Virus record (IMG/VR): IMGVR_UViG_3300020477_000990
Span: 264,150-328,149 of that record
Length of the DNA: 64,000 nucleotides
Reading direction: 5' to 3' (one strand)
Positions 48,271 through 60,634 of the stretch are shown one piece after another; position 1 is the stretch's first letter, and every line of letters starts with the position of its first letter. The notes below the pieces were generated by a model. It had not been told where the DNA came from. It did no database searches and saw only the letters and a program-made list of their open reading frames with translations. Both the position numbers and the translations under genes were made by a program.

Positions 48271-48495
48271 ATGTGGGATAAAGTTATTAATGGCGTTAAG
48301 AAATTAACTGAAGTAGGAATTACGTTAATTTCATTTGGCGTTGTATTACAGGTGTTATTTGGTGACAAACTAATTGGGTTTTATGACCTTGATGTAGTTG
48401 CTAATATCATTAATATCGTAAATCAAATCGGTAGCCAAGGTCTTGTAGGCCTTGTAGCTTTATGGATCCTTTGGTGGATTTTTACTAAGAGATAA
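48271..48495 (+). CDS. small two-helix membrane protein (paralogue of 58937)
   Basis: LTEV...VLQV.FG...DVV.N...GLVGLVA; SD AAGGAG. Confidence 0.75.
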   Translation: MWDKVINGVKKLTEVGITLISFGVVLQVLFGDKLIGFYDLDVVANIINIVNQIGSQGLVGLVALWILWWIFTKR

Positions 48496-50904: not shown

Positions 50905-50965
50905 GTTTTTAATTTTCTCTTGACAGTATAAATATGTATGTATATACATAGATTAAGGAATTGTC

Positions 50966-51352
50966 ATGACAGATAAAACATTTAAAGATTATTTGAAGCT
51001 AGTTGAAGACGGTACTCCAGAGCCAAGTGTAACACCACATGATGATCTTGGTTTAGCAGACGAGTTAGTTAATATAGCACAAAATGATCCAGATTTATAT
51101 AATAGACAGTATTTTCCAATAATCAAGAACTTATTGCGTAAAAGAGTAAAAGGAGTATATGATCATAATTTAGCTATTAAATTATGGCGTTACTTAATTG
51201 ACAATGTTGCTAAACATGATGCAGGGCATATGGCTAGACATAAATGGTCAGGTGTAGTTAGAAATTTAGCCGCAAAAGAACTTGCAGATGAAGAACTTGG
51301 TAATATGGAAAATGGTGAATATGATCATATTGATTTAAAACGAGGAGCATAA
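50966..51352 (+). CDS. putative internal head protein
   Basis: N-terminus KTFKDYLKLVE resembles T4-type capsid-targeting sequences; TATAAATA upstream. Confidence 0.5.
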   Translation: MTDKTFKDYLKLVEDGTPEPSVTPHDDLGLADELVNIAQNDPDLYNRQYFPIIKNLLRKRVKGVYDHNLAIKLWRYLIDNVAKHDAGHMARHKWSGVVRNLAAKELADEELGNMENGEYDHIDLKRGA

Positions 51353-51354
51353 TA

Positions 51355-51498
51355 ATGGCGATAAAGAGTGTAGAATCAATTATCGATCATAAGCCTAAAC
51401 GCACTAGTCAAGGTGGCAAAAAACCAAAGATGTCATCAATGAATAAAGATAAAAGAAGAACATATAAGAAATATAGAGGGCAAGGTAGAGGTAAATGA
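51355..51498 (+). CDS. 47-aa highly basic phage peptide (not in ORF track)
   Basis: MAIKSVESIIDHKPKRTSQGGKKPKMSSMNKDKRRTYKKYRGQGRGK; SD GAGGAG; ATGA overlap with the next gene. Confidence 0.75.
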   Translation: MAIKSVESIIDHKPKRTSQGGKKPKMSSMNKDKRRTYKKYRGQGRGK

Positions 51499-54400
51499 AA
51501 TTAAACGAACTTATACAACCTAAAGGGACAAAAGCGTCATTTACATTTGGTAGATTTAATCCACCAACTAAAGGTCATTCTCATCTTTTAAATGTAGTTA
51601 AGAAAGCGGCAGGAACAGGTGATCATTATGTTTTCACAGGAAGAACAAATGATAAAGATCGTAATCCATTAAGATATGAAGATAAAATTACATTAATGAG
51701 AGCAATGTTCCCAACAATTAATATTGTAGATGATCCAAATGTAAAAAATCCTTGGCAGGCACTTGAAGAGTTAGGTAAGCATTATGATGATGTTACTTTA
51801 GTTGTTGGTTCGGATAGGCAACAAGATTTCCAATCTCAAATGAGACCATATATGAAAGAGTTTGGTATTAAAAATTTTCAAGTAATTAGTTCAGGAGAAC
51901 GTGATGCAGACTCAACTGATGTGCAAGGTATTTCGGCAACTAAAGCTAGAGCATTTGCTAGAGTAGGAGACTTTAAATCATTTTCACAAACAGTAGATGG
52001 TGGCGAAACACTTAAAAAAGAATTATATAATAAAGTAAGACAAGGTATGGGAGTTACTGAAAGTAAAAAGCCAGTACCACCTAAAAAACCAAATCCAGTT
52101 GCAAAACAATTAACAGATCCAAAATTTAGACCACAAACAGTTAAAGATAAGAAAAAAGAAATTGATAAAGGATATGTTAAGCACAAAGGCAAGGCGTATG
52201 ATATTAATGAAGCATATATTATGGATTTAAATCAAAACCAAGATTTACTTGTATTAAGAGTTAAAGACACAGATAAAAAAGGACATATAGAAGTTAGAGG
52301 TAAAAAGAATTATGAAACAGATGGGTATGATCCAAAAGATCCATTGCACAGAGTTTTAGATCAATTAGATGGAGCAACAGTTTCAAGATTATATTCAGAT
52401 GAAAAAGTAGTTTTAAATCCAAAAAATCCTAGAACAGCACCAACAATAAAAAAAGCACAAGAACTTATGAAAGAACAAGAGCCAAGTAAGCCAATTGTTT
52501 ATGTTGACATGGACGGCGTATTAGCAAACTTCTTTGAAGAGTATGCTAAATTGGCAGGAGTTAAATCAGGAAACTATAAAGATATTCCACCAGCTAAAAC
52601 AGACCCTACATTAAATAAAATGGTAGGTACAGATTTTTTTAATAGATTACCAAAGTTTCCAACAGCAGATAAATTATTGCAATTAGTTACATCGATGTTT
52701 GGTAGCTATTCAATTTTATCAGCACCATTAAGAGGTGATCATCAAAATAGTACAGCACAAAAACATAAATGGATACAACGTGAACTTGCTATTAAGCCAG
52801 ATAATGTTATTATAGTTGGAAGAAAAGATTCTTATGCTACACAGGCAGATGGCACACCTAATATATTAATTGATGATAGAGGAAGAAATGTTGAAGCATG
52901 GAGAAATAGAGGTGGGCTTGGAGTTAAGTATCAAGCTGATGAAGATCCTTTATCTAAAGTAGAACAAGCACTTACACAATTTAAAGGACAGTTTACTTTG
53001 AAAGAATGGGGCGGGCTAATTGTTAAGGGCATAAATACCACAGCAGATGTAGGTATGGATGCAATTAAAAAGCAGTCAGGAAAATTAGGATTTAAAGTTG
53101 ATAAACAAGGAAAGCCACCAATAATGAATACAAAAGGTCAAGCAGTAGTTAAACGTATGCAAGAGCAGTTAATTAAAATTAACGGTTCAAATAAAGATTT
53201 AACATTACAGCAACAAATAGATTTATTAGAAATTACTAAAGGTATTAAAAATATCGTTAAAGAAAGAAAAGCAAAAAGAGTTAAAAAAGCATCATCTAAT
53301 GCATCAGAAGTTCCATATCAAAATGATGCAGGAACAATGAGTTTACTTACACATCCTGGTACAGAGCTTTGGCAAAAAATGAAAGCAACATCTAAGCCAG
53401 GAACAGAAGAATGGTTTAAAACTTGGAGAACATTATCATACTTAACTAAAGGTAGAAAGAATCATTATATGTTACCTATTAAAGAAGAATTAGAAAAACT
53501 TTTAGTTAAGTATAAAATTATTAAAGAAAGTGATGTAGTTGATTTACAACAAGCAATTGCTAAAAGAGTTTCATCAGTAACTGATCCAGCACTTTTAAAT
53601 AAAATAGCAAGTATGTTACGTAGAAGTAATATTGGTAACATTTCAAGAATGGCATTTAAGCAAGACGAAGATGCGGCAAAATTTATTAATAGGTTATCAG
53701 AAATAATTGTAGGAATTGAAGTTCCAATAAATGATAAAATTGCGTTCCTTAGAAAATTTGGAAGATCTAATTTTATTAAACCTGAAGTACTATTTGATAA
53801 TAGTGGTGCAGTACATTCAATGGATGATTGGTGGGAAGGAACTGGATTTGCAACAACTATGTTTAAGTTAATGATAAACGATCCACAGCTTCAAGGAAAA
53901 TCAGCAGGTGAATCTGGACCAGGTGAAGTTGCAATAGCTTGTTTCCATAAAAAGATTTCAGTAGGTTCTGATCCATCAGCAGGATACGATTTAAAATGGG
54001 GTAATCAAGAAATTGAAGTTAAAACAAAAGCATCAGAAAAATCTAGTTCAGGTGGCGGACGTTGGACAGCATATGATGGTGCTCCATTAGAAACTTATTT
54101 ACAAAGTGGTCAAAGTTTATTAGATCCAGAAAAAGTTCCTGCAGGTGTTAGAGCAACAAAATCATCACGTGCTGGAACACAAATAAGTTTTGCAGAAGTT
54201 TTAAATAATCCACAATACTTAAAAGATCCTAATACACCGTTAACTCAACAACAACAAAAAGAAATTTTTGCAAAAGTATTAAAACAAGCATATCAAAGTG
54301 CACCTAATGAAATTATTAATACAGCATTAGCAAATTATCCTAACGTAACAGATAAAGATATTGCACAGGCGGCATTTGCTAGTTATAGAGTTAAGCAAGG

Positions 54401-54557
54401 ATTTCAGTCAATGCTATTAATGAAGGCATCAGGTGGCGGAATTAGTACAATACACTTTAGTGAATTAGATAAAGGAATTGATAATTTTAAAGTTAATGGT
54501 CCGTATGTACGTGGACAAAAGCAACGTGGAATGGATGTTCAAGCAACATTAAGGTAA
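51495..54557 (+). CDS. multidomain polyprotein: cytidyltransferase-like + HAD 5'-nucleotidase-like + PD-(D/E)xK-like
   Basis: GRFNPPTKGH (HxGH-type), VYVDMDGVLANF...LIDD (HAD), GPGE...D...EIEVK; N-terminal MKLNEL tag. Confidence 0.7.
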   Translation: MKLNELIQPKGTKASFTFGRFNPPTKGHSHLLNVVKKAAGTGDHYVFTGRTNDKDRNPLRYEDKITLMRAMFPTINIVDDPNVKNPWQALEELGKHYDDVTLVVGSDRQQDFQSQMRPYMKEFGIKNFQVISSGERDADSTDVQGISATKARAFARVGDFKSFSQTVDGGETLKKELYNKVRQGMGVTESKKPVPPKKPNPVAKQLTDPKFRPQTVKDKKKEIDKGYVKHKGKAYDINEAYIMDLNQNQDLLVLRVKDTDKKGHIEVRGKKNYETDGYDPKDPLHRVLDQLDGATVSRLYSDEKVVLNPKNPRTAPTIKKAQELMKEQEPSKPIVYVDMDGVLANFFEEYAKLAGVKSGNYKDIPPAKTDPTLNKMVGTDFFNRLPKFPTADKLLQLVTSMFGSYSILSAPLRGDHQNSTAQKHKWIQRELAIKPDNVIIVGRKDSYATQADGTPNILIDDRGRNVEAWRNRGGLGVKYQADEDPLSKVEQALTQFKGQFTLKEWGGLIVKGINTTADVGMDAIKKQSGKLGFKVDKQGKPPIMNTKGQAVVKRMQEQLIKINGSNKDLTLQQQIDLLEITKGIKNIVKERKAKRVKKASSNASEVPYQNDAGTMSLLTHPGTELWQKMKATSKPGTEEWFKTWRTLSYLTKGRKNHYMLPIKEELEKLLVKYKIIKESDVVDLQQAIAKRVSSVTDPALLNKIASMLRRSNIGNISRMAFKQDEDAAKFINRLSEIIVGIEVPINDKIAFLRKFGRSNFIKPEVLFDNSGAVHSMDDWWEGTGFATTMFKLMINDPQLQGKSAGESGPGEVAIACFHKKISVGSDPSAGYDLKWGNQEIEVKTKASEKSSSGGGRWTAYDGAPLETYLQSGQSLLDPEKVPAGVRATKSSRAGTQISFAEVLNNPQYLKDPNTPLTQQQQKEIFAKVLKQAYQSAPNEIINTALANYPNVTDKDIAQAAFASYRVKQGFQSMLLMKASGGGISTIHFSELDKGIDNFKVNGPYVRGQKQRGMDVQATLR

Positions 54558-54565
54558 ATATTATT

Positions 54566-54862
54566 ATGCGTATATTAGAAATTATAAGTGAAAATGACAG
54601 ACGTGATTTTATGAAACGTTTGGGTAAAACAGCGGCGGCTACAGCTGGTGCTTTAGCTTTAGGATCATTTGCACTTCCATCAAAAGCATGGCCTAGTGAA
54701 TTACCTGATAATTTTAACTTTATGGATGAGTTTTTAAGTGATAAAGTTTTAAATGATCCAAAATATAAAGAATTTAAATTAAATGGTGAAAAGCTTCTTG
54801 ATATGTTAAAGAATATAGAAAAAAATAAGTTAAAAAAACAGGATAAAGGCATAGACGTTTAA
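54566..54862 (+). CDS. putative internal head protein with internal Tat signal
   Basis: MRILEIISE followed by RRDFMK, a hydrophobic stretch and SKA. Confidence 0.6.
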   Translation: MRILEIISENDRRDFMKRLGKTAAATAGALALGSFALPSKAWPSELPDNFNFMDEFLSDKVLNDPKYKEFKLNGEKLLDMLKNIEKNKLKKQDKGIDV

Positions 54863-55114
54863 ATGAAAATTGGTGATATTATTACTGAAGAAGCTACAGT
54901 AGGATCTACTATGGCTGGTAATTTTGCGGCATTGGCATTTCCTATGACTCCTGGTACTACACATGATCAGGCTATTAAAGCAGTAGATCCATTCGGTAAA
55001 ATATTCAAAAATGCTAAAAAGAAACGTAAAGATATATGGAAAATGGGTTACAGCCCAGATGCTTTAGCATATAGGACTAAAGTGAAAGATATCTATCCTA
55101 TTTTAAAACGTTAA
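54863..55114 (+). CDS. putative internal head protein
   Basis: MKIGDIITEE tag. Confidence 0.55.
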   Translation: MKIGDIITEEATVGSTMAGNFAALAFPMTPGTTHDQAIKAVDPFGKIFKNAKKKRKDIWKMGYSPDALAYRTKVKDIYPILKR

Positions 55115-55145
55115 AAAAGATAAATATTTGTAAGGTACACATATT

Positions 55146-55655
55146 ATGAAATTAAACGAGCTATTTAAACCAGAACAATCATCGTCATTACAAGATTTTA
55201 AAGATTATTATGACAATGCTACTCAATCTATGATTACTAGAGTAAAAGCTGGTGAAAATTATCATGAAGTAATTAATCAATTAGCACGAGAGTTTGCATC
55301 ACAACATAGTGATAGTTACGAAATGTTTGATTTAATGGCTGACGGTTTAAAAAAGCGACATTGGGAAATGTTTTGGGATGAAAAAGAAGAAAAATCAGAA
55401 CCAGAAACACCTGTTGCAATAGTAGTACAACCAGATGAAAAAGAAGTTAAAGAATATGATGGTCCAGATGAAACCCAAGATAATCAAGGATATACAGATA
55501 AGGAAATTAAAATGGCATTTGGTATTTTAAATGATCCTAGATATAAGCAAGGTAATTATTCAGGAGCATACGCGGCCATTGAAAAAATTGCTAAAGGTTT
55601 AGCAAGTCATCCAAGTGTAGCAAACGCATTAAGACGAGCAAACGAGTCGGAGTAA
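55146..55655 (+). CDS. putative internal head protein
   Basis: MKLNELF tag; TAAATA upstream. Confidence 0.55.
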   Translation: MKLNELFKPEQSSSLQDFKDYYDNATQSMITRVKAGENYHEVINQLAREFASQHSDSYEMFDLMADGLKKRHWEMFWDEKEEKSEPETPVAIVVQPDEKEVKEYDGPDETQDNQGYTDKEIKMAFGILNDPRYKQGNYSGAYAAIEKIAKGLASHPSVANALRRANESE

Positions 55656-55659
55656 CGCC

Positions 55660-58134
55660 ATGCGTATCCACGAAGTTGCACCCCCAGGAAGAGAAAAGCA
55701 AGTAAAGAAACTTAAAAAGAAGTTTGATGATCCATCGGCGGCTTACGCCATTGCTTGGGCTCAACATAACAAACATGGTAAGCCTAAAAAAGAAACAAAG
55801 TATGCAAACGTTCCAGGAAGAGAATACGATGCAGATGATAGAGCAGAAGCAAAATTATGGTCTTTGCAAGATCGTAAATCAGCACTTTTAAAAAAATTAG
55901 ATAGAGTTGCAGGCGAAGGTGGCAAAGTTAATATTAATGATCCAATATATAAAGAATTACAAGCAGTTAAAAAAGCAATAGGAAATTTCAAAAAGCAAGG
56001 AATTGGCGAAGATAAAATTCCAAACGATATGCCTGGTATGGTTGGTGATAGTGCTTGGTATAAAAAAACAGGTCAATTAGTTAGAATAGTCGATTACACT
56101 CAAGATGGTAAAGATGGAATTTACACAATTTCATTTGGTGATGGCAGAGGTGAAATGGATGTATTGGTGCATGATTTAGAATTTATAGATGATACAACAT
56201 ATCAAGATTTACCAGACTATGGTGATACAGAAGATAATATGTCTGATATAGAAGCAGATGCAGATACACTAGCATCAGCTGGAATGGGTAGCGATGAAGA
56301 TTATGGCTACTATGGTGATAATGAATCAGTTGATCCTATTAGAAGTGATAGAGGTGCTAAAGAAGAATTAGCAAAAGAAATTTATTACAATGGATCTAGT
56401 GCAAAACATTATCAAAAAATGTATCCTACTTGGGAAGACTTTATGAACTCAGAAGACTTCGAAGAAGAAAATATGAGATTATGGAATAAGTTTGGTGAAA
56501 GTAAAAATGTTGAAATGTGTCCAGAAGCTTGTTGCGGTGTACCAGTAACAGAGTGTTCATGTGGTTCAGATTGTAAACATTGTGATTGTAATGCAAAAAA
56601 TAATGAAGTAAAAGAAGATTTAAAAAAATCATTAAATGAAAGAATGCCTGCTTCAGTTATTAAACATAAACAAAAACTTTCTTTTATGACTGATAAAGAA
56701 TTAGCAGATAGATTTAAAGATTTTGATGAAACAAGATTACGTCAAATGGCATGGAGACATGGCTATGGCAAAATGAGTTCACACTATTGGGATAGAGTAC
56801 AAGCTGGTAAAAACGAATCAGTAACTAATGAAGACCAAACAACAGTTGACGTTAAAGCAATATTAGACAAGCACGGTATTAAAAGTACATACGATATTGA
56901 ATATGGTTCAGATGCCTTTAGTGATTTATTTGATTATTTTTCAAGTGATCCTGATGAAATGCCATACGGTGTTCAAAAAGCAAGAACAGGAATGCCAGAT
57001 GAATGGATTGCAAATAGACTTATAGACTTAGGTTTACTTAAAGAAGCACCATTCCGAAGAAGATTTGCAACAAAAAGTAAAAATCCATTTAGCGGAACAC
57101 AAAAAGCATTAAACACATTAGGGTCAATGTTTGGTTCAAGAAAAGCACAAGGTAGATTAAACACAGGCGTTGAAGCAAATAAAATTGCAAAAGATTGGGA
57201 AGATTATACTTCAGGAGATACAGCAAGACAAATAAATAAAAACTTTAATGGATTTTTAGGTAGCATTGGAGGTAGTGGCAATCCTGAAACATCAGCAAAA
57301 TGGTTTCAAAAAAATCATAAAATAACAATTCCACCAGCTGACTATCAAAAAACTTTTAAACAAGATGGTACTCCACAAGAAAGAGATACAGTATTCAATA
57401 TTATAAAAAAGAGTTCATTAGACTCAGATAGTATTCAGACTTGGTTTAAAAATAATCATGGTATGGTACTTACGCAACCTGATGTAAATCAATTATTAGC
57501 AAATCCAAAAACAGCAATTATAGATTTTGTAAAAAGAAAAGAAGCAGGACAAATGGGTCCAAAAGCTGATGCAACAAAGCCAGAAACTAAACCAGATGCA
57601 CAAGGAGATTTATTTACAGGTGATGATCAAGCTGATCCAACATTAGCACAAATTAAAAAATTAAATCCAGATGCTTCACAAAAATCTGTGAAAGCATTAG
57701 ATAAACTTAAACCAGATGCACAAGGAAAAATGGCACCGTTAAATCCAGAAGAAGAAAAAGAATTAGCACCAATATTACAAAAGATAGGTGCGGCATTAAC
57801 TGATCCTGCTAAAAGAGCCAAGTTAGTAAATATGATGACGTCAGGTAAGTATAGTGATTTTAAAGATTTTACATCAATATTGAGTGAATCAATTAGTAGA
57901 GAAGAATTATCTAAATTGGATTATTTGGCTAGACAAGGACTAGTTCCAAGTTCTAAAGTATCAAGATTTAAGACAGCCATGCGTACACTTGCTAAAGGTA
58001 AAGACTTATCAATAACATATAAAAATGATGTAGTAGATGTAGTTGTTAAATTAGCTGGTATTATTACTAAACCTGGTGTAATGCAAATGGTTAGAAGGGG
58101 ACTAAATAAAGATAAGGGTAAAGGTAAAAAGTAA
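55660..58134 (+). CDS. putative internal head polyprotein with Cys-rich module
   Basis: MRIHE tag; modules separated by xxE-S/A/D sites; CPEACCGVPVTECSCGSDCKHCDC. Confidence 0.6.
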   Translation: MRIHEVAPPGREKQVKKLKKKFDDPSAAYAIAWAQHNKHGKPKKETKYANVPGREYDADDRAEAKLWSLQDRKSALLKKLDRVAGEGGKVNINDPIYKELQAVKKAIGNFKKQGIGEDKIPNDMPGMVGDSAWYKKTGQLVRIVDYTQDGKDGIYTISFGDGRGEMDVLVHDLEFIDDTTYQDLPDYGDTEDNMSDIEADADTLASAGMGSDEDYGYYGDNESVDPIRSDRGAKEELAKEIYYNGSSAKHYQKMYPTWEDFMNSEDFEEENMRLWNKFGESKNVEMCPEACCGVPVTECSCGSDCKHCDCNAKNNEVKEDLKKSLNERMPASVIKHKQKLSFMTDKELADRFKDFDETRLRQMAWRHGYGKMSSHYWDRVQAGKNESVTNEDQTTVDVKAILDKHGIKSTYDIEYGSDAFSDLFDYFSSDPDEMPYGVQKARTGMPDEWIANRLIDLGLLKEAPFRRRFATKSKNPFSGTQKALNTLGSMFGSRKAQGRLNTGVEANKIAKDWEDYTSGDTARQINKNFNGFLGSIGGSGNPETSAKWFQKNHKITIPPADYQKTFKQDGTPQERDTVFNIIKKSSLDSDSIQTWFKNNHGMVLTQPDVNQLLANPKTAIIDFVKRKEAGQMGPKADATKPETKPDAQGDLFTGDDQADPTLAQIKKLNPDASQKSVKALDKLKPDAQGKMAPLNPEEEKELAPILQKIGAALTDPAKRAKLVNMMTSGKYSDFKDFTSILSESISREELSKLDYLARQGLVPSSKVSRFKTAMRTLAKGKDLSITYKNDVVDVVVKLAGIITKPGVMQMVRRGLNKDKGKGKK

Positions 58135-58394
58135 TGAAAGATCAAATTATAATGTTACTAATAGGTATTTTAATTGCGTTAGGCGGTTGGAACCTTACCC
58201 AAACTTTTAGTTTATCAACTACTCAAGCAGTTATTGATGATAAAGTTGATAAATTAGAAAGAAGCGTCGAGAAATTGCAAGATCAAATGGATGATATGCA
58301 AAAAATGGATGAAGAGATTGTTGAACAACATGAAGATTTGTTTAGACAATTACAAGAAGGCAATACAGCACCATCAACAGGATATAATTACTAA
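58134..58394 (+). CDS. single-TM coiled-coil protein
   Basis: Hydrophobic N-terminus plus heptad repeats. Confidence 0.6.
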   Translation: MKDQIIMLLIGILIALGGWNLTQTFSLSTTQAVIDDKVDKLERSVEKLQDQMDDMQKMDEEIVEQHEDLFRQLQEGNTAPSTGYNY

Positions 58395-58783
58395 TGAAAA
58401 TACATGATATTATAAATGAAGACAATGTTATTGATCTTAAAGGCCCACAAGGTAATGCTTATTTCCTTTTAGGCACAGCTAAAAAATTAGCAAAAGATTT
58501 AAATCTTGATTACGACAAAATTCAAAAAGAAATGACTGCTTGTAATTACGATAATTTAGTAGATGTTTTTAAAAAATACTTTGGTGAATATGTTGATGTT
58601 AGAGAAAATGAACTTGGTGTGCCACGTATGAACAAGTATAACATTTATACAACAAAAAGCAAAGATGGTGATTTTCAGGCCTGGCAAGGTGAAAAACATC
58701 TTGGAACTTTTAAAACGATTCAAGATTTAAATAAATTTTGGGATCACGCAATAAACAGCGGAAAAATTAAACCTCAAGAGTAA
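58394..58783 (+). CDS. putative internal head protein
   Basis: MKIHDIINE tag followed by an IDLKGPQGNAYFLLG domain. Confidence 0.6.
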   Translation: MKIHDIINEDNVIDLKGPQGNAYFLLGTAKKLAKDLNLDYDKIQKEMTACNYDNLVDVFKKYFGEYVDVRENELGVPRMNKYNIYTTKSKDGDFQAWQGEKHLGTFKTIQDLNKFWDHAINSGKIKPQE

Positions 58784-58936: not shown

Positions 58937-59161
58937 ATGCTTGATAAAATTAAATCGGTACTGTCAAGTCTTACAGAAGTGGCATTAACGTTTTTACTAC
59001 TTGGCATCGTGTTGCAAGTGGTGTTCGGATCAGTTCCGTTCTTCCCTGCAGATGTCGTAGGTAATCTTGTTGCACTAGTTGGGTCACTTGGTGACGCAGG
59101 TGTAGTAGGACTTATTGCAATTGGTGTTATTTATTGGCTCGCTAACAGAGGCAAGAAGTAA
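58937..59161 (+). CDS. small two-helix membrane protein (paralogue of 48271)
   Basis: LTEV...VLQV.FG...DVVGN...GVVGLIA; SD AAGGAGG. Confidence 0.75.
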   Translation: MLDKIKSVLSSLTEVALTFLLLGIVLQVVFGSVPFFPADVVGNLVALVGSLGDAGVVGLIAIGVIYWLANRGKK

Positions 59162-59701: not shown

Positions 59702-60634
59702 ATGAGAATATTTCCAAGCAAGGCTTTAATAGGCTTTTTAGCAGTAATATTTGCGTTTGTATTAGTCAGTTGTAGTGAAGCTGAAGCTGTAGAGACAAAA
59801 ATCTACGGTACGTTTAACTACAAATTGAGTAATGACGAGAATAGTTCTGGTACAAGTCATTTAAAGGCTGAAAACAACTCATCGTTGGTAGGCATTGACG
59901 CCGCTGAAGATATTGGCGAAGGCATAACTGGCTTTGCTAAATTAGAAGTAGGTGTTGATACTGATGATGGCAATAACAATCCTTTTGATTCACGTTTAGC
60001 TTATGTAGGCTTAAACTTTGGTCAACTAGGATCGATATCTGCAGGACGTCAGTCATCTCCATTTACTGATAATGTAAGTGGAATAACAAATGTATTTGAA
60101 GTTTATGGTTCAGGTGCAGATCAAAATTTGTTCACACGTGATGCAAATACGATCGCATACTCGAATCAAATGGCGGGAATTACATTTGATGGTCTAGCAA
60201 AGATAGACGGTTCTACAGGTAAGAATGGGATAGATGTTTCAGAAGCAACAGCTACCTATTCTACATTTGGAGTAACTGTAAGTGGTGGTGTATCAAATGA
60301 TCATGTAAATGATATTGATTACTACGGCGCTGGAGTATCTTATGATGCTTCGTCAATGGGTGTACCTGTAAGTGTAGGTTATACTTACACATATAAGGAT
60401 GCCGCAACTGATGTTACAGGCAATGAAATCATTGGATCTTATTCTGTTAGTAATGATTTAAAAGTTACTGGTGGATACGGTAAAATCGAAGATTCAACTG
60501 CATTTTATACAGCAGGAGCATCATATGGAATAACTGGTTCATTATCAACGTATGTTGAATATGAGCATCAAAACAAAACTGGATCAAATAACGATACAGA
60601 CAGTTATTCTACCGGTCTTAAATTTACATTCTAA
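59702..60634 (+). CDS. Gram-negative porin
   Basis: Signal peptide, IYG, S..G..E..G...AKLE, RLAYVGL..G.I.AGR, C-terminal GLKFTF beta-signal. Confidence 0.88.
   Translation: MRIFPSKALIGFLAVIFAFVLVSCSEAEAVETKIYGTFNYKLSNDENSSGTSHLKAENNSSLVGIDAAEDIGEGITGFAKLEVGVDTDDGNNNPFDSRLAYVGLNFGQLGSISAGRQSSPFTDNVSGITNVFEVYGSGADQNLFTRDANTIAYSNQMAGITFDGLAKIDGSTGKNGIDVSEATATYSTFGVTVSGGVSNDHVNDIDYYGAGVSYDASSMGVPVSVGYTYTYKDAATDVTGNEIIGSYSVSNDLKVTGGYGKIEDSTAFYTAGASYGITGSLSTYVEYEHQNKTGSNNDTDSYSTGLKFTF

What the first reader, a model, noticed from the sequence alone, without database searches (positions are those of the whole stretch)
54566..54862. Cryptic twin-arginine signal behind a head-targeting tag
Seen: MRILEIISE|NDRRDFMKRLGKTAAATAGALALGSFALPSKA|W, an RRxF Tat motif with h-region and a plausible peptidase site, starting right after the putative Glu cleavage site. 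Inference: a protein packaged in the capsid, unmasked by the prohead protease, injected and then exported by host Tat to the periplasm (for example for superinfection exclusion).
Basis: inference. Interest (0 to 1): 0.62.

Follow-up and report, generated by a model that had tools for sequence, protein, structure and literature searches.

The report
Head-targeting tag fused to Tat signal
A small gene of a 328-kb marine T4-related giant phage starts with a tag like the one T4 uses to load proteins into its head, followed at once by a conserved bacterial Tat export signal, which suggests (unproven) that the phage carries in its head a protein that the newly infected cell then exports to its own periplasm.

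Summary
ORF 54566-54862 (+) encodes the 98-aa protein exactly as read. Residues 11-42 pass NCBI's curated Tat-signal model TIGR01409, as do 36 of 38 homologues. Pfam's shorter model PF10518 does not reach its cut-off. R12, R13, E9, A41 and W42 are invariant in the 38 homologues.

The 9-residue N-terminus is a real, protein-level tag. Six of seven consecutive genes here carry it, and so do many neighbours in related marine contigs. A matrix trained only on those neighbours ranks this ORF 2nd of 423 genes. With one residue skipped, the tag lines up with the T4 capsid targeting sequence. The genome encodes a T4 gp21-type prohead protease. In the nearest cultured relative, PA5oct, 5 of 6 tagged ORFs are mass-spectrometry-confirmed virion proteins.

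The same layout (tag, hydrophobic-x-Glu, then a Tat signal 2-4 residues later) recurs on at least five other unrelated cargo domains in other metagenomic contigs.

Every trafficking step is inference: packaging, cleavage after Glu9, injection and Tat export. "Cryptic" is not needed, because a 9-11 residue N-extension is normal for Tat signals. The function of the 57-aa helical mature peptide is unknown. Verdict: partly supported; a new variant of known kinds.

The parts
54566..54862 (+). Whole ORF, 98 codons plus stop. It is the precursor with a bipartite leader.
   Evidence: 81 homologues, all from marine metagenomes.
54566..54592 (+). Codons 1-9 (MRILEIISE): a tag like the T4 capsid targeting sequence, ending in hydrophobic-x-Glu (I-S-E).
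   Evidence: The neighbour-trained matrix scores it 14.3 bits, 2nd of 423 genes. E9 is invariant. T4 ipII and ipIII align to the tag with one residue skipped.
54593..54688 (+). Residues 10-41: Tat-type signal peptide. It has the RR pair (codons at 54599-54604) in D-R-R-D-F-M-K, an Ala/Gly/Thr-rich h-region, and P-S-K-A before the predicted signal peptidase site.
   Evidence: TIGR01409 24.7 bits against a cut-off of 16.7; 36 of 38 members match. The best 12-residue hydropathy window is 1.59. PF10518 is below its cut-off.
54689..54859 (+). Residues 42-98: predicted mature 57-aa peptide. It has an invariant W42 and a conserved FMDxFLSDKVLNDPKYKEFK block, followed by a long helix.
   Evidence: Alignment A2. 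AlphaFold2 pLDDT is 64-82 over residues 43-91, with a helix at 65-91. No family or fold match.
51495..54557 (+). Tagged neighbour (MKLNELIQP...), 1020 aa: cytidylyltransferase-like domain, DUF7230 and NT5C nucleotidase, then an unassigned C-terminal half.
54863..55114 (+). Tagged neighbour (MKIGDIITEE...), 83 aa. It lies downstream of the Tat gene in every relative examined.
55146..55655 (+). Tagged neighbour (MKLNELFKPE...), 169 aa.
55660..58134 (+). Tagged neighbour (MRIHEVAPP...), 824 aa.
58394..58783 (+). Tagged neighbour (MKIHDIINED...), 129 aa.
50927..50934 (+). TATAAATA (T4 late-promoter-like octamer), 31 nt upstream of gene 50966-51352, which heads the co-directional run that contains the tagged genes.
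   Evidence: The octamer occurs 25 times where 70.7 are expected, and 17 of the 25 lie within 60 nt upstream of a gene start, including the portal gene and a head-core gene.

Best explanation
The gene encodes a 98-aa precursor with two stacked N-terminal address labels.

**Label 1, residues 1-9.** This is the local version of the T4 capsid targeting sequence. It docks the precursor onto the scaffolding core of the prohead. The phage's gp21-type prohead protease then removes it by cutting after Glu9 (I-S-E|N).

**Label 2, residues 10-41.** This is a Tat signal peptide: N-D-R-R-D-F-M-K, a weakly hydrophobic h-region, and P-S-K-A|W. Cleavage after Glu9 leaves it at the new N-terminus of the packaged 89-aa form.

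**After infection.** The packaged form enters the new host with the DNA. The host TatABC system exports it and signal peptidase I trims it. This puts a 57-aa, mostly helical peptide into the periplasm of a Gram-negative host before any phage gene is expressed. There the peptide presumably binds an envelope target through its invariant FMDxFLSD...KY..FK block.

Some uncut precursor is probably also exported late in the producing cell.

**Shown:** the two motifs, their conservation, the protease gene, the shared tag, the link between tag and virion proteins in PA5oct, and the recurrence of the layout on other cargos.

**Inferred:** packaging of this particular protein, the cleavage site, injection, Tat dependence, signal peptidase cleavage, and the periplasmic target.
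For: **Tat signal.**
- TIGR01409 is above its cut-off in the focal protein, in 36 of 38 homologues, and in all 8 other dual-leader proteins tested.
- R12, R13, K17, A41 and W42 are invariant.
- The RR pair is kept through synonymous codon changes, and there is no alternative start at codon 16 in one lineage.
- The nearest language-model neighbours are small Tat-signal proteins, but the scores (0.83-0.85) make this a lead only.

**Tag.**
- 8 + strand ORFs match the tag pattern, against none on the - strand.
- 6 of those 8 lie in 7 consecutive genes.
- There is no shared upstream DNA.
- Many tagged neighbours occur in 5 related loci.
- With a matrix trained on those neighbours, 7 of 423 N-termini score 8 bits or more, against 2 of 1719 internal Met positions. 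The focal ORF ranks 2nd.

**T4-type head machinery.** PF03420 prohead protease (93 bits) and PF07068 major capsid protein (322 bits) are present.

**Head-module and virion link.**
- A tagged 66-aa protein lies between portal and protease. It is 45% identical to PA5oct gp333, a virion protein by ESI-MS/MS.
- 5 of 6 tagged PA5oct ORFs are annotated ESI-MS/MS structural proteins. The base rate is 93 of 461 (abstract of PMC7318152). My own binomial estimate gives p of about 0.002.

**T4 comparison.**
- T4 ipII and ipIII begin MKTYQEFIAE and score 8.8 bits on the tag matrix with residue 3 skipped.
- In T4, residues 4 and 7 target and residues 8 and 10 direct processing (PMC9026906). These map onto the conserved tag positions 3, 6, 7 and 9.

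**Recurrence.** The layout tag, hydrophobic-x-Glu, then a Tat motif 2-4 residues later, is found on at least 5 other unrelated mature domains. In one family the first 44 residues are nearly invariant while the cargo diverges to 32-51% identity.

**Host envelope.** A phage-encoded Porin_4 and an Rz-like spanin show that the host has an outer membrane and a periplasm.
Against: - No experimental or proteomic datum exists for this protein. No cultured phage carries it.
- Pfam's Tat model does not reach its cut-off.
- A 9-residue extension does not mask Tat signals in known substrates (my own knowledge). The precursor could therefore simply be exported in the producing cell and never be packaged.
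- The ESI-MS/MS notes for PA5oct do not separate head proteins from tail proteins, and PA5oct has no homologue of this gene.
- In the higher-GC contig L040 the dual-leader gene is the only tagged gene in 13 kb, so the tag is not shown to be a general capsid tag there.
- The host is unknown, so the presence of TatABC is unverified.
- The mature part is a short, non-globular helix. That gives no obvious reason to need a pathway for folded proteins.
Confidence: 0.38

Rival explanations
1. It is an ordinary phage-encoded periplasmic protein. It is made during infection and exported by Tat in the producing cell, for example as a lysis regulator or an exclusion factor in the manner of T4 RI, Sp or Imm. 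The N-terminal resemblance to the neighbours' tag is a by-product of recombination in this hyperplastic gene cluster, or simply the n-region of the signal. The protein is not packaged.
For: The Tat signal is strong and conserved. An 11-residue n-region is normal for Tat signals (my own knowledge). Small phage proteins with cleavable signals that act in the periplasm are known, for example the 97-aa T4 antiholin RI (PMC8385771). An Rz-like spanin gene lies 3.3 kb downstream. In L040 no neighbour carries the tag.
Against: The tag positions are under protein-level constraint. E9 is invariant, and positions 2, 3, 5, 6 and 7 change only conservatively, whereas n-regions of Tat signals are usually free to vary. 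The tag scores as well as that of any neighbour. A hydrophobic-x-Glu is always kept 2-4 residues before the RR pair, even when the tag is 5 residues longer. There is no similarity to RI, Sp, Imm or any lysis family.
Confidence: 0.3
2. It is a head-internal ejection protein, and the hydrophobic stretch is not an export signal. That stretch would be a membrane-inserting helix used during genome delivery, for example as part of a channel or anchor at the inner membrane. The RR motif would be a positive-inside determinant.
For: The evidence that the tag is linked to virion proteins is the same as for the main explanation. Ejection proteins that act in the envelope are known in other tailed phages (PMC8402733 abstract). 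The predicted helix spans residues 10-31.
Against: The stretch matches the curated Tat model in 10 different protein families or variants, in several as the canonical SRR[SG]FLK motif. The signal peptidase-type P-x-x-A site is conserved, with A41 and W42 invariant. The h-region is weakly hydrophobic (1.59) and poor as a stable transmembrane helix.
Confidence: 0.12
3. It is a Tat 'carrier' subunit. The small signal-bearing protein binds a signal-less enzyme encoded next to it (Fe/Mn superoxide dismutase, FMN reductase or PAP2 phosphatase in relatives) and takes it across the membrane by hitch-hiking.
For: In relatives the gene overlaps, or lies 0-3 genes after, a superoxide dismutase gene, or directly after FMN_red or PAP2 genes. 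Hitch-hiking on a partner's Tat signal is established (PMC10924467 abstract). A hydrogenase small subunit is among the nearest language-model neighbours, but this is a lead only.
Against: The window's own genome has no superoxide dismutase at all, yet it keeps the gene at 64-93% identity to those relatives. The immediate upstream neighbour differs in every lineage. The dismutase carries its own distinct N-terminal peptide. No binding test was run.
Confidence: 0.07
4. It is a chance ORF or a mis-called start. The true product would start at Met16 with a Sec-type signal, or the ORF would not be a gene.
For: Met16-Lys-Arg followed by the h-region would look like a Sec signal.
Against: There are 81 homologues with conserved residues 1-15. 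Synonymous changes occur at R12 and R13, and Met16 is Ile in one lineage. Contigs from RNA libraries lie on the gene, though DNA carry-over is not excluded.
Confidence: 0.02

Closest known systems
Phage T4 internal proteins IPI/IPII/IPIII and their capsid targeting sequence (CTS)
   Same: Both have a short N-terminal propeptide shared by otherwise unrelated proteins that are encoded in a variable gene cluster. Both end in hydrophobic-x-Glu, as expected for a gp21-type protease, and such a protease is encoded here. T4 MKTYQEFIAE aligns with the tag with one residue skipped.
   Different: The tag is one residue shorter and does not match ungapped (-11.4 bits). No T4 internal protein is known to carry an export signal behind the CTS (my own knowledge). 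No paper in the searched library contains both 'twin-arginine' and 'capsid targeting'. Packaging is not shown here.
Bacterial Tat signal peptides (TIGR01409), for example on TorA-type periplasmic enzymes and the small 'formate dehydrogenase region TAT target' proteins (TIGR02811)
   Same: It has an RRxF[LM]K motif, an Ala/Gly/Thr-rich h-region, a basic residue in the c-region and an AxA-like site. It scores above the curated cut-off. There are weak hits to TIGR02811 over the signal only.
   Different: It is encoded by a phage. The n-region is a conserved tag shared with proteins that have no signal. The cargo is a 57-aa helix with no sign of a cofactor site. Pfam PF10518 is not met.
T4 periplasm- or envelope-acting small proteins (antiholin RI, spackle Sp, Imm)
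   Same: They are of similar size (about 100 aa), have an N-terminal signal, and are presumed to act in the envelope of the infected cell (PMC8385771).
   Different: There is no sequence or fold similarity. Those proteins use Sec-type or SAR signals, are made after infection and are not packaged (my own knowledge).
Ejection proteins of P22, T7 and giant phiKZ-like phages
   Same: They are proteins carried in the capsid, often trimmed after Glu by a prohead protease, that act in the host at the moment of infection.
   Different: They reach the envelope directly during ejection. None is known to be re-routed by a host export pathway (my own knowledge; no hit).

Membership tests
Tat (twin-arginine) signal peptide | Twin-arginine motif close to (S/T)-R-R-x-F-L-K near the N-terminus | tested here: met
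   D-R-R-D-F-M-K at residues 11-17. R12, R13 and K17 are invariant and F15 is conserved in at least 90% of 38 homologues.
Tat (twin-arginine) signal peptide | Score above the curated cut-off of a Tat-signal model | tested here: inconclusive
   TIGR01409: 24.7 bits against a cut-off of 16.7, and 36 of 38 members match. Pfam PF10518: 6.9 bits against a cut-off of 22.7.
Tat (twin-arginine) signal peptide | Weakly hydrophobic h-region, and a c-region with small residues at -3 and -1 | tested here: met
   The best 12-residue Kyte-Doolittle window is 1.59. The site is P-S-K-A|W, with P38, A41 and W42 invariant.
Tat (twin-arginine) signal peptide | Export depends on TatABC and on the RR pair | not testable with these tools
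   This needs a reporter fusion in wild-type and tatC-deleted cells, with an RR-to-KK control. The host of the phage is unknown.
T4-type capsid targeting sequence / internal protein | Short N-terminal propeptide shared by unrelated proteins of one phage | tested here: met
   Six of seven consecutive genes carry it, as do many neighbours in 5 related loci. Matrix rank 2 of 423.
T4-type capsid targeting sequence / internal protein | The phage encodes a gp21-family prohead protease, and the propeptide ends in hydrophobic-x-Glu | tested here: met
   PF03420 at 93 bits, G000 205402-205833. The propeptide ends I-S-E9, with E9 invariant.
T4-type capsid targeting sequence / internal protein | Sequence match to the T4 CTS itself | tested here: inconclusive
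   Ungapped -11.4 bits. With T4 residue 3 skipped the score is 8.8 bits, the best of three gap positions tried.
T4-type capsid targeting sequence / internal protein | The protein is present in the virion and is cleaved at the propeptide | not testable with these tools
   Only indirect evidence exists: 5 of 6 tagged ORFs of PA5oct are ESI-MS/MS virion proteins.
T4 RI / Sp / Imm families | Sequence or fold similarity of the mature part | tested here: not met
   No Pfam, PHROG, NCBIfam, PDB-sequence or BFVD fold match to the mature part.

The most novel reading that the evidence does not exclude
Giant T4-related phages run an 'inject, then export' route. A family of bipartite leaders (capsid-targeting tag, a protease site after a Glu, then a Tat signal) loads several unrelated effectors into the head. 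Once they are injected, the host's own Tat machinery delivers them to the periplasm within the first minutes of infection. This would be a delivery route for phage proteins that has not been described before.
Probability: 0.22. Interest if true: 0.85.

Novelty: new variant of a known kind. Interest (0 to 1): 0.62.

Why it matters
Phage internal proteins are known as pre-made weapons that act in the cytoplasm. T4 IPI*, for example, acts against a restriction enzyme (PMC3012670). A pre-made protein that the victim cell itself exports to its periplasm would extend that idea to the envelope. The envelope is where superinfection, lysis timing and several defences are decided.

The leader is short, modular and present on at least six different cargos. 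It therefore gives a directly testable handle: nine residues for packaging and about 32 for export. It is also a possible tool for delivering proteins to the periplasm by phage.

Even if only the tag part is right, the window documents a T4-like 'internal protein' cluster in an uncultured marine giant phage. That cluster includes very large enzymes.

Tried and rejected
- **Function of the mature part.** Pfam, PHROGs and NCBIfam on the focal protein gave nothing beyond the signal. Searches with the family profile against PDB sequences, and with the model against BFVD folds, also gave nothing. The AlphaFold2 model is low-confidence overall (pLDDT 61), so no further fold searches were made.
- **Cultured phages.** tblastn and blastn against 50,697 cultured phage records found no relative of the gene, of the 7.6-kb region, or of either leader. 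One call failed on a length limit.
- **Regulatory cassette idea.** I tested whether the shared tag is a mobile DNA cassette with its own promoter and ribosome binding site. This was rejected because the upstream DNA differs and the codons differ.
- **Start at Met16 (Sec signal).** Rejected.
- **Superoxide dismutase hitch-hiking.** Downgraded, because the window's own genome has no such gene.
- **Host identification.** A search of bacterial genomes for relatives of the phage porin found nothing.
- **Other cargos on the focal leader.** A word search restricted to residues 1-44 found only the same family.
- **Second family in IMG/VR.** A scan with alignment A3 found nothing; the metagenome scan did.
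- **P0082, apparent fusion with the Tat region internal.** It rests on a single 3.1-kb contig and has an in-frame internal Met 24 residues upstream of the NARR motif, so it is not used as evidence.
- **Typed tag sequences.** I re-ran the step from locus coordinates.
- **RNA-library contigs.** They cover the gene, but DNA carry-over cannot be excluded.

Full report
**1. What is there.**

The window is the last 64 kb (264150-328149) of a 328,149-bp virus record with direct terminal repeats. It is 27-37% G+C and nearly all genes are on the + strand.

AAGG lies 10 nt before the ATG. No Pfam or PHROG family matches the protein.

**2. The Tat-like part is real as a sequence feature.**

- NCBIfam TIGR01409 (TAT_signal_seq) matches residues 11-42 at 24.7 bits, above its curated cut-off of 16.7. 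It matches 36 of 38 homologues.
- Pfam's shorter model PF10518 does not reach its cut-off (6.9 against 22.7 bits). The two curated models disagree, and I report that as it is.
- The word search found 81 homologues, all unnamed proteins from marine metagenomes.
- In 38 full-length homologues M1, E9, R12, R13, K17, G20, K21, P38, A41 and W42 are invariant.
- The Arg pair is written AGA-CGT or AGA-AGA in different lineages. Met16 is Ile in one lineage. Residues 1-15 are therefore translated and selected as protein, and a Sec-type start at Met16 is excluded.
- The h-region is weakly hydrophobic (best 12-residue window 1.59). No other ORF in the genome has a credible RR-plus-hydrophobic N-terminus.
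- A language-model neighbour search returned small Tat-signal proteins, but at scores (0.83-0.85) that the tool rates as leads only.

**3. The N-terminal tag is real and acts at the protein level.**

- Eight + strand ORFs and no - strand ORFs begin M[KR][ILVM]x[ED][ILVFM]. Six of them are among seven consecutive genes at window 51495-58783.
- Their upstream DNA is unrelated and their codons differ, so this is not a repeated DNA cassette.
- In five related metagenomic loci the same region is a variable cluster. Many genes of unrelated content start the same way. They include a PAP2 phosphatase, a cytidylyltransferase-nucleotidase, DUF7230 proteins and small Lys/Gly-rich proteins.
- I built a position matrix from 27 such neighbour tags, using no sequence from this genome or from the focal family. 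It ranks the focal N-terminus 2nd of 423 genes (14.3 bits).
- Seven of 423 N-termini reach 8 bits, against 2 of 1719 internal Met positions.

**4. Why the tag looks like a capsid targeting sequence.**

- The genome encodes a T4 gp21-family prohead protease (PF03420, 93 bits) and a gp23-family major capsid protein (PF07068, 322 bits).
- The capsid protein is about 70% identical to that of Pseudomonas jumbo phage PA5oct and its Rak2-like relatives.
- A tagged 66-aa ORF (MRYRELIKE...) lies between the portal and protease genes. It is 45% identical to PA5oct gp333, which is annotated as a structural protein seen by ESI-MS/MS.
- In PA5oct six ORFs carry the tag, and five of them are ESI-MS/MS virion proteins. 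The base rate is 93 of 461 (abstract of PMC7318152). My own binomial estimate is p of about 0.002.
- T4 ipII and ipIII begin MKTYQEFIAE (read from the T4 record).
- With T4 residue 3 skipped, this scores 8.8 bits on the tag matrix. Ungapped it scores -11.4, and three gap positions were tried.
- In T4, residues 4 and 7 of the CTS direct targeting and residues 8 and 10 direct cleavage (PMC9026906). These fall on tag positions 3, 6, 7 and 9, which are the conserved ones.
- A T4 late-promoter-like TATAAATA sits 31 nt before the first gene of the co-directional run. The octamer is depleted genome-wide and concentrated before gene starts, including head genes. This is weak evidence for late expression.

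**5. The combination recurs.**

A profile search of 1.84 billion representative proteins and follow-up look-ups found further proteins with the same layout on other mature domains. The layout is a tag, then a hydrophobic-x-Glu, then a Tat motif 2-4 residues later.

| Leader | Where found | Cargo |
|---|---|---|
| MRIHEIITE, then LDPSRRSFLK | P0085, P0087, P0088, P0089; P0086 | Two cargo types |
| MRIHEIITE, then MDPSRRGFLK | P0090 | A third cargo type |
| MRAHEFILE, then MDPSRRGFLK | L050 | A further cargo type |
| MKINEIVQHDIFFE, then MDPSRRGFLK | L051 | Its tail shares a motif with a tagged protein of the marine cluster; the next gene in L051 is also tagged |
| MKINEVINVSLFFE, then MDPSRRGFLK | L052 | A further cargo type |

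- All eight of these proteins that I tested pass the TIGR01409 cut-off (19.2-23.7 bits).
- In alignment A3 nearly all of the first 44 residues are invariant, while the cargo falls to 32-51% identity. This is the pattern known for the T4 CTS: conserved address, free cargo.
- These contigs have 39-51% G+C. L040 shares a ClpP (58.5% identity) and a small protein with the window's genome, and it holds a T4 Imm-family gene. It is therefore probably a related phage group.
- In L040 no other gene within 13 kb carries the tag, and no protease gene is on the fragments.

**6. What is not shown.**

- Nothing shows that this protein is in virions, that it is cut after Glu9, that it is injected, or that Tat exports it.
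- Natural Tat signals often have 10 or more residues before the RR pair (my own knowledge). The uncut precursor should therefore already be a Tat substrate, so 'cryptic' and 'unmasked' are not supported. Export in the producing cell is likely to compete with packaging.
- The host is unknown. A phage porin (Porin_4, 79 bits) and an Rz-like spanin indicate only that the host is Gram-negative.
- The mature 57-aa part is predicted as an extended conserved segment followed by one long helix (pLDDT 64-82). It matches no family or fold, so its target and role are open. Superinfection exclusion is one guess among several.
- Contigs from RNA libraries of two runs lie on the gene, but DNA carry-over is not excluded.

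**7. Rivals.**

- The main rival is a plain Tat-exported periplasmic phage protein whose tag is not used. Against it stand the protein-level conservation of the tag and the fixed Glu 2-4 residues before the RR pair in all variants, even when the tag is five residues longer.
- A membrane-insertion role for the hydrophobic stretch fits poorly with the conserved signal peptidase site and the weak hydrophobicity.
- A hitch-hiker role for the neighbouring superoxide dismutase is weakened because this genome has no such gene.

**8. Comparison and novelty.**

The parts are known kinds: the T4 CTS with a gp21-type protease, and the bacterial Tat signal. I found no description of the two in tandem. No paper in the searched library holds both 'twin-arginine' and 'capsid targeting', or both 'Tat signal' and 'jumbo phage', and no cultured phage holds either leader. 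I rate it a new variant of a known kind, with moderate-to-high interest that depends on experiments which are simple to design.

Noticed in passing
G000 205980-207092 (scaffold gene, outside the window); G000 230621-232807; PA5oct gp330 and gp249; L005:7363, L007:7354, L014:5930, L015:6606, L016:6606: There may be a second capsid-loading peptide, [LI][KR]xLAG[IL]. It forms the extreme C-terminus of the scaffold protein in this genome (...ELKKLAGLGVK) and in PA5oct (...ELRRLAGIK), and the C-terminus of a 728-aa protein here. It also lies inside the PA5oct virion protein gp249. In the marine relatives it opens a roughly 50-residue N-terminal extension of the Fe/Mn superoxide dismutase. Only 2 of 423 genes of this genome match, and both matches are C-terminal.
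   Followed up: partly
L005, L007, L014, L015, L016, L036 (relatives); absent from the window's genome: In relatives, an Fe/Mn superoxide dismutase, an FMN reductase and a PAP2 phosphatase lie directly upstream of the Tat-leader gene, sometimes with overlapping stop and start codons. The window's genome has no superoxide dismutase gene.
   Followed up: partly
window 51495-54557: A tagged 1020-aa protein combines a cytidylyltransferase-like domain, a DUF7230 motif, an NT5C 5'-nucleotidase domain and a roughly 500-residue unassigned C-terminal half. If it is packaged it would be a large injected enzyme, comparable in idea to T4 Alt.
   Followed up: no
window 59702-60634: A phage-encoded Gram-negative porin (Porin_4, 79 bits) has a lipoprotein-like N-terminus. 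It is conserved in relative L014. No close bacterial relative was found.
   Followed up: partly
window 54863-55114 and homologues in L005, L007, L014, L015, L016, L036: An 83-88 aa tagged protein always lies downstream of the Tat-leader gene. In some relatives it is separated from it by inserted tail-fibre-like genes. It has a conserved Gly/Ala/Thr/Ser-rich block ending in PM(T/F)(P/T)G. Its function is unknown.
   Followed up: no
L036:1346-2263 (protein P0082): A single 3.1-kb Tara contig encodes a 305-aa ORF in which the Tat-like region and mature domain are internal (residues 213-305), after ...FKLAEE|NARRDFMKK. If this is real, the signal could work only after proteolysis. However, an in-frame Met lies 24 residues upstream of the NARR motif, and there is only the one contig.
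   Followed up: partly
whole genome G000; window 50927-50934: TATAAATA is strongly depleted (25 found, 70.7 expected, on the + strand). Of the 25 copies, 17 lie within 60 nt upstream of a gene start. These include the portal gene and a head-core gene, but also an EF-G-like gene and a cold-shock gene in the window.
   Followed up: no
run X4, laid on window 52600-55926: A very small DNA run (4.6 million letters), filed under a named organism rather than as a metagenome, holds a 3.7-kb contig identical to the window. It may be a single-cell or single-virus genome and so a clue to the host.
   Followed up: no
window 58134-58394, 48271-48495 and 58937-59161: An 86-aa Rz-like i-spanin candidate (phrog_739, E 6e-7) has no obvious lipoprotein partner. 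The window also holds two similar 74-aa single-pass membrane proteins, which may be lysis genes.
   Followed up: no
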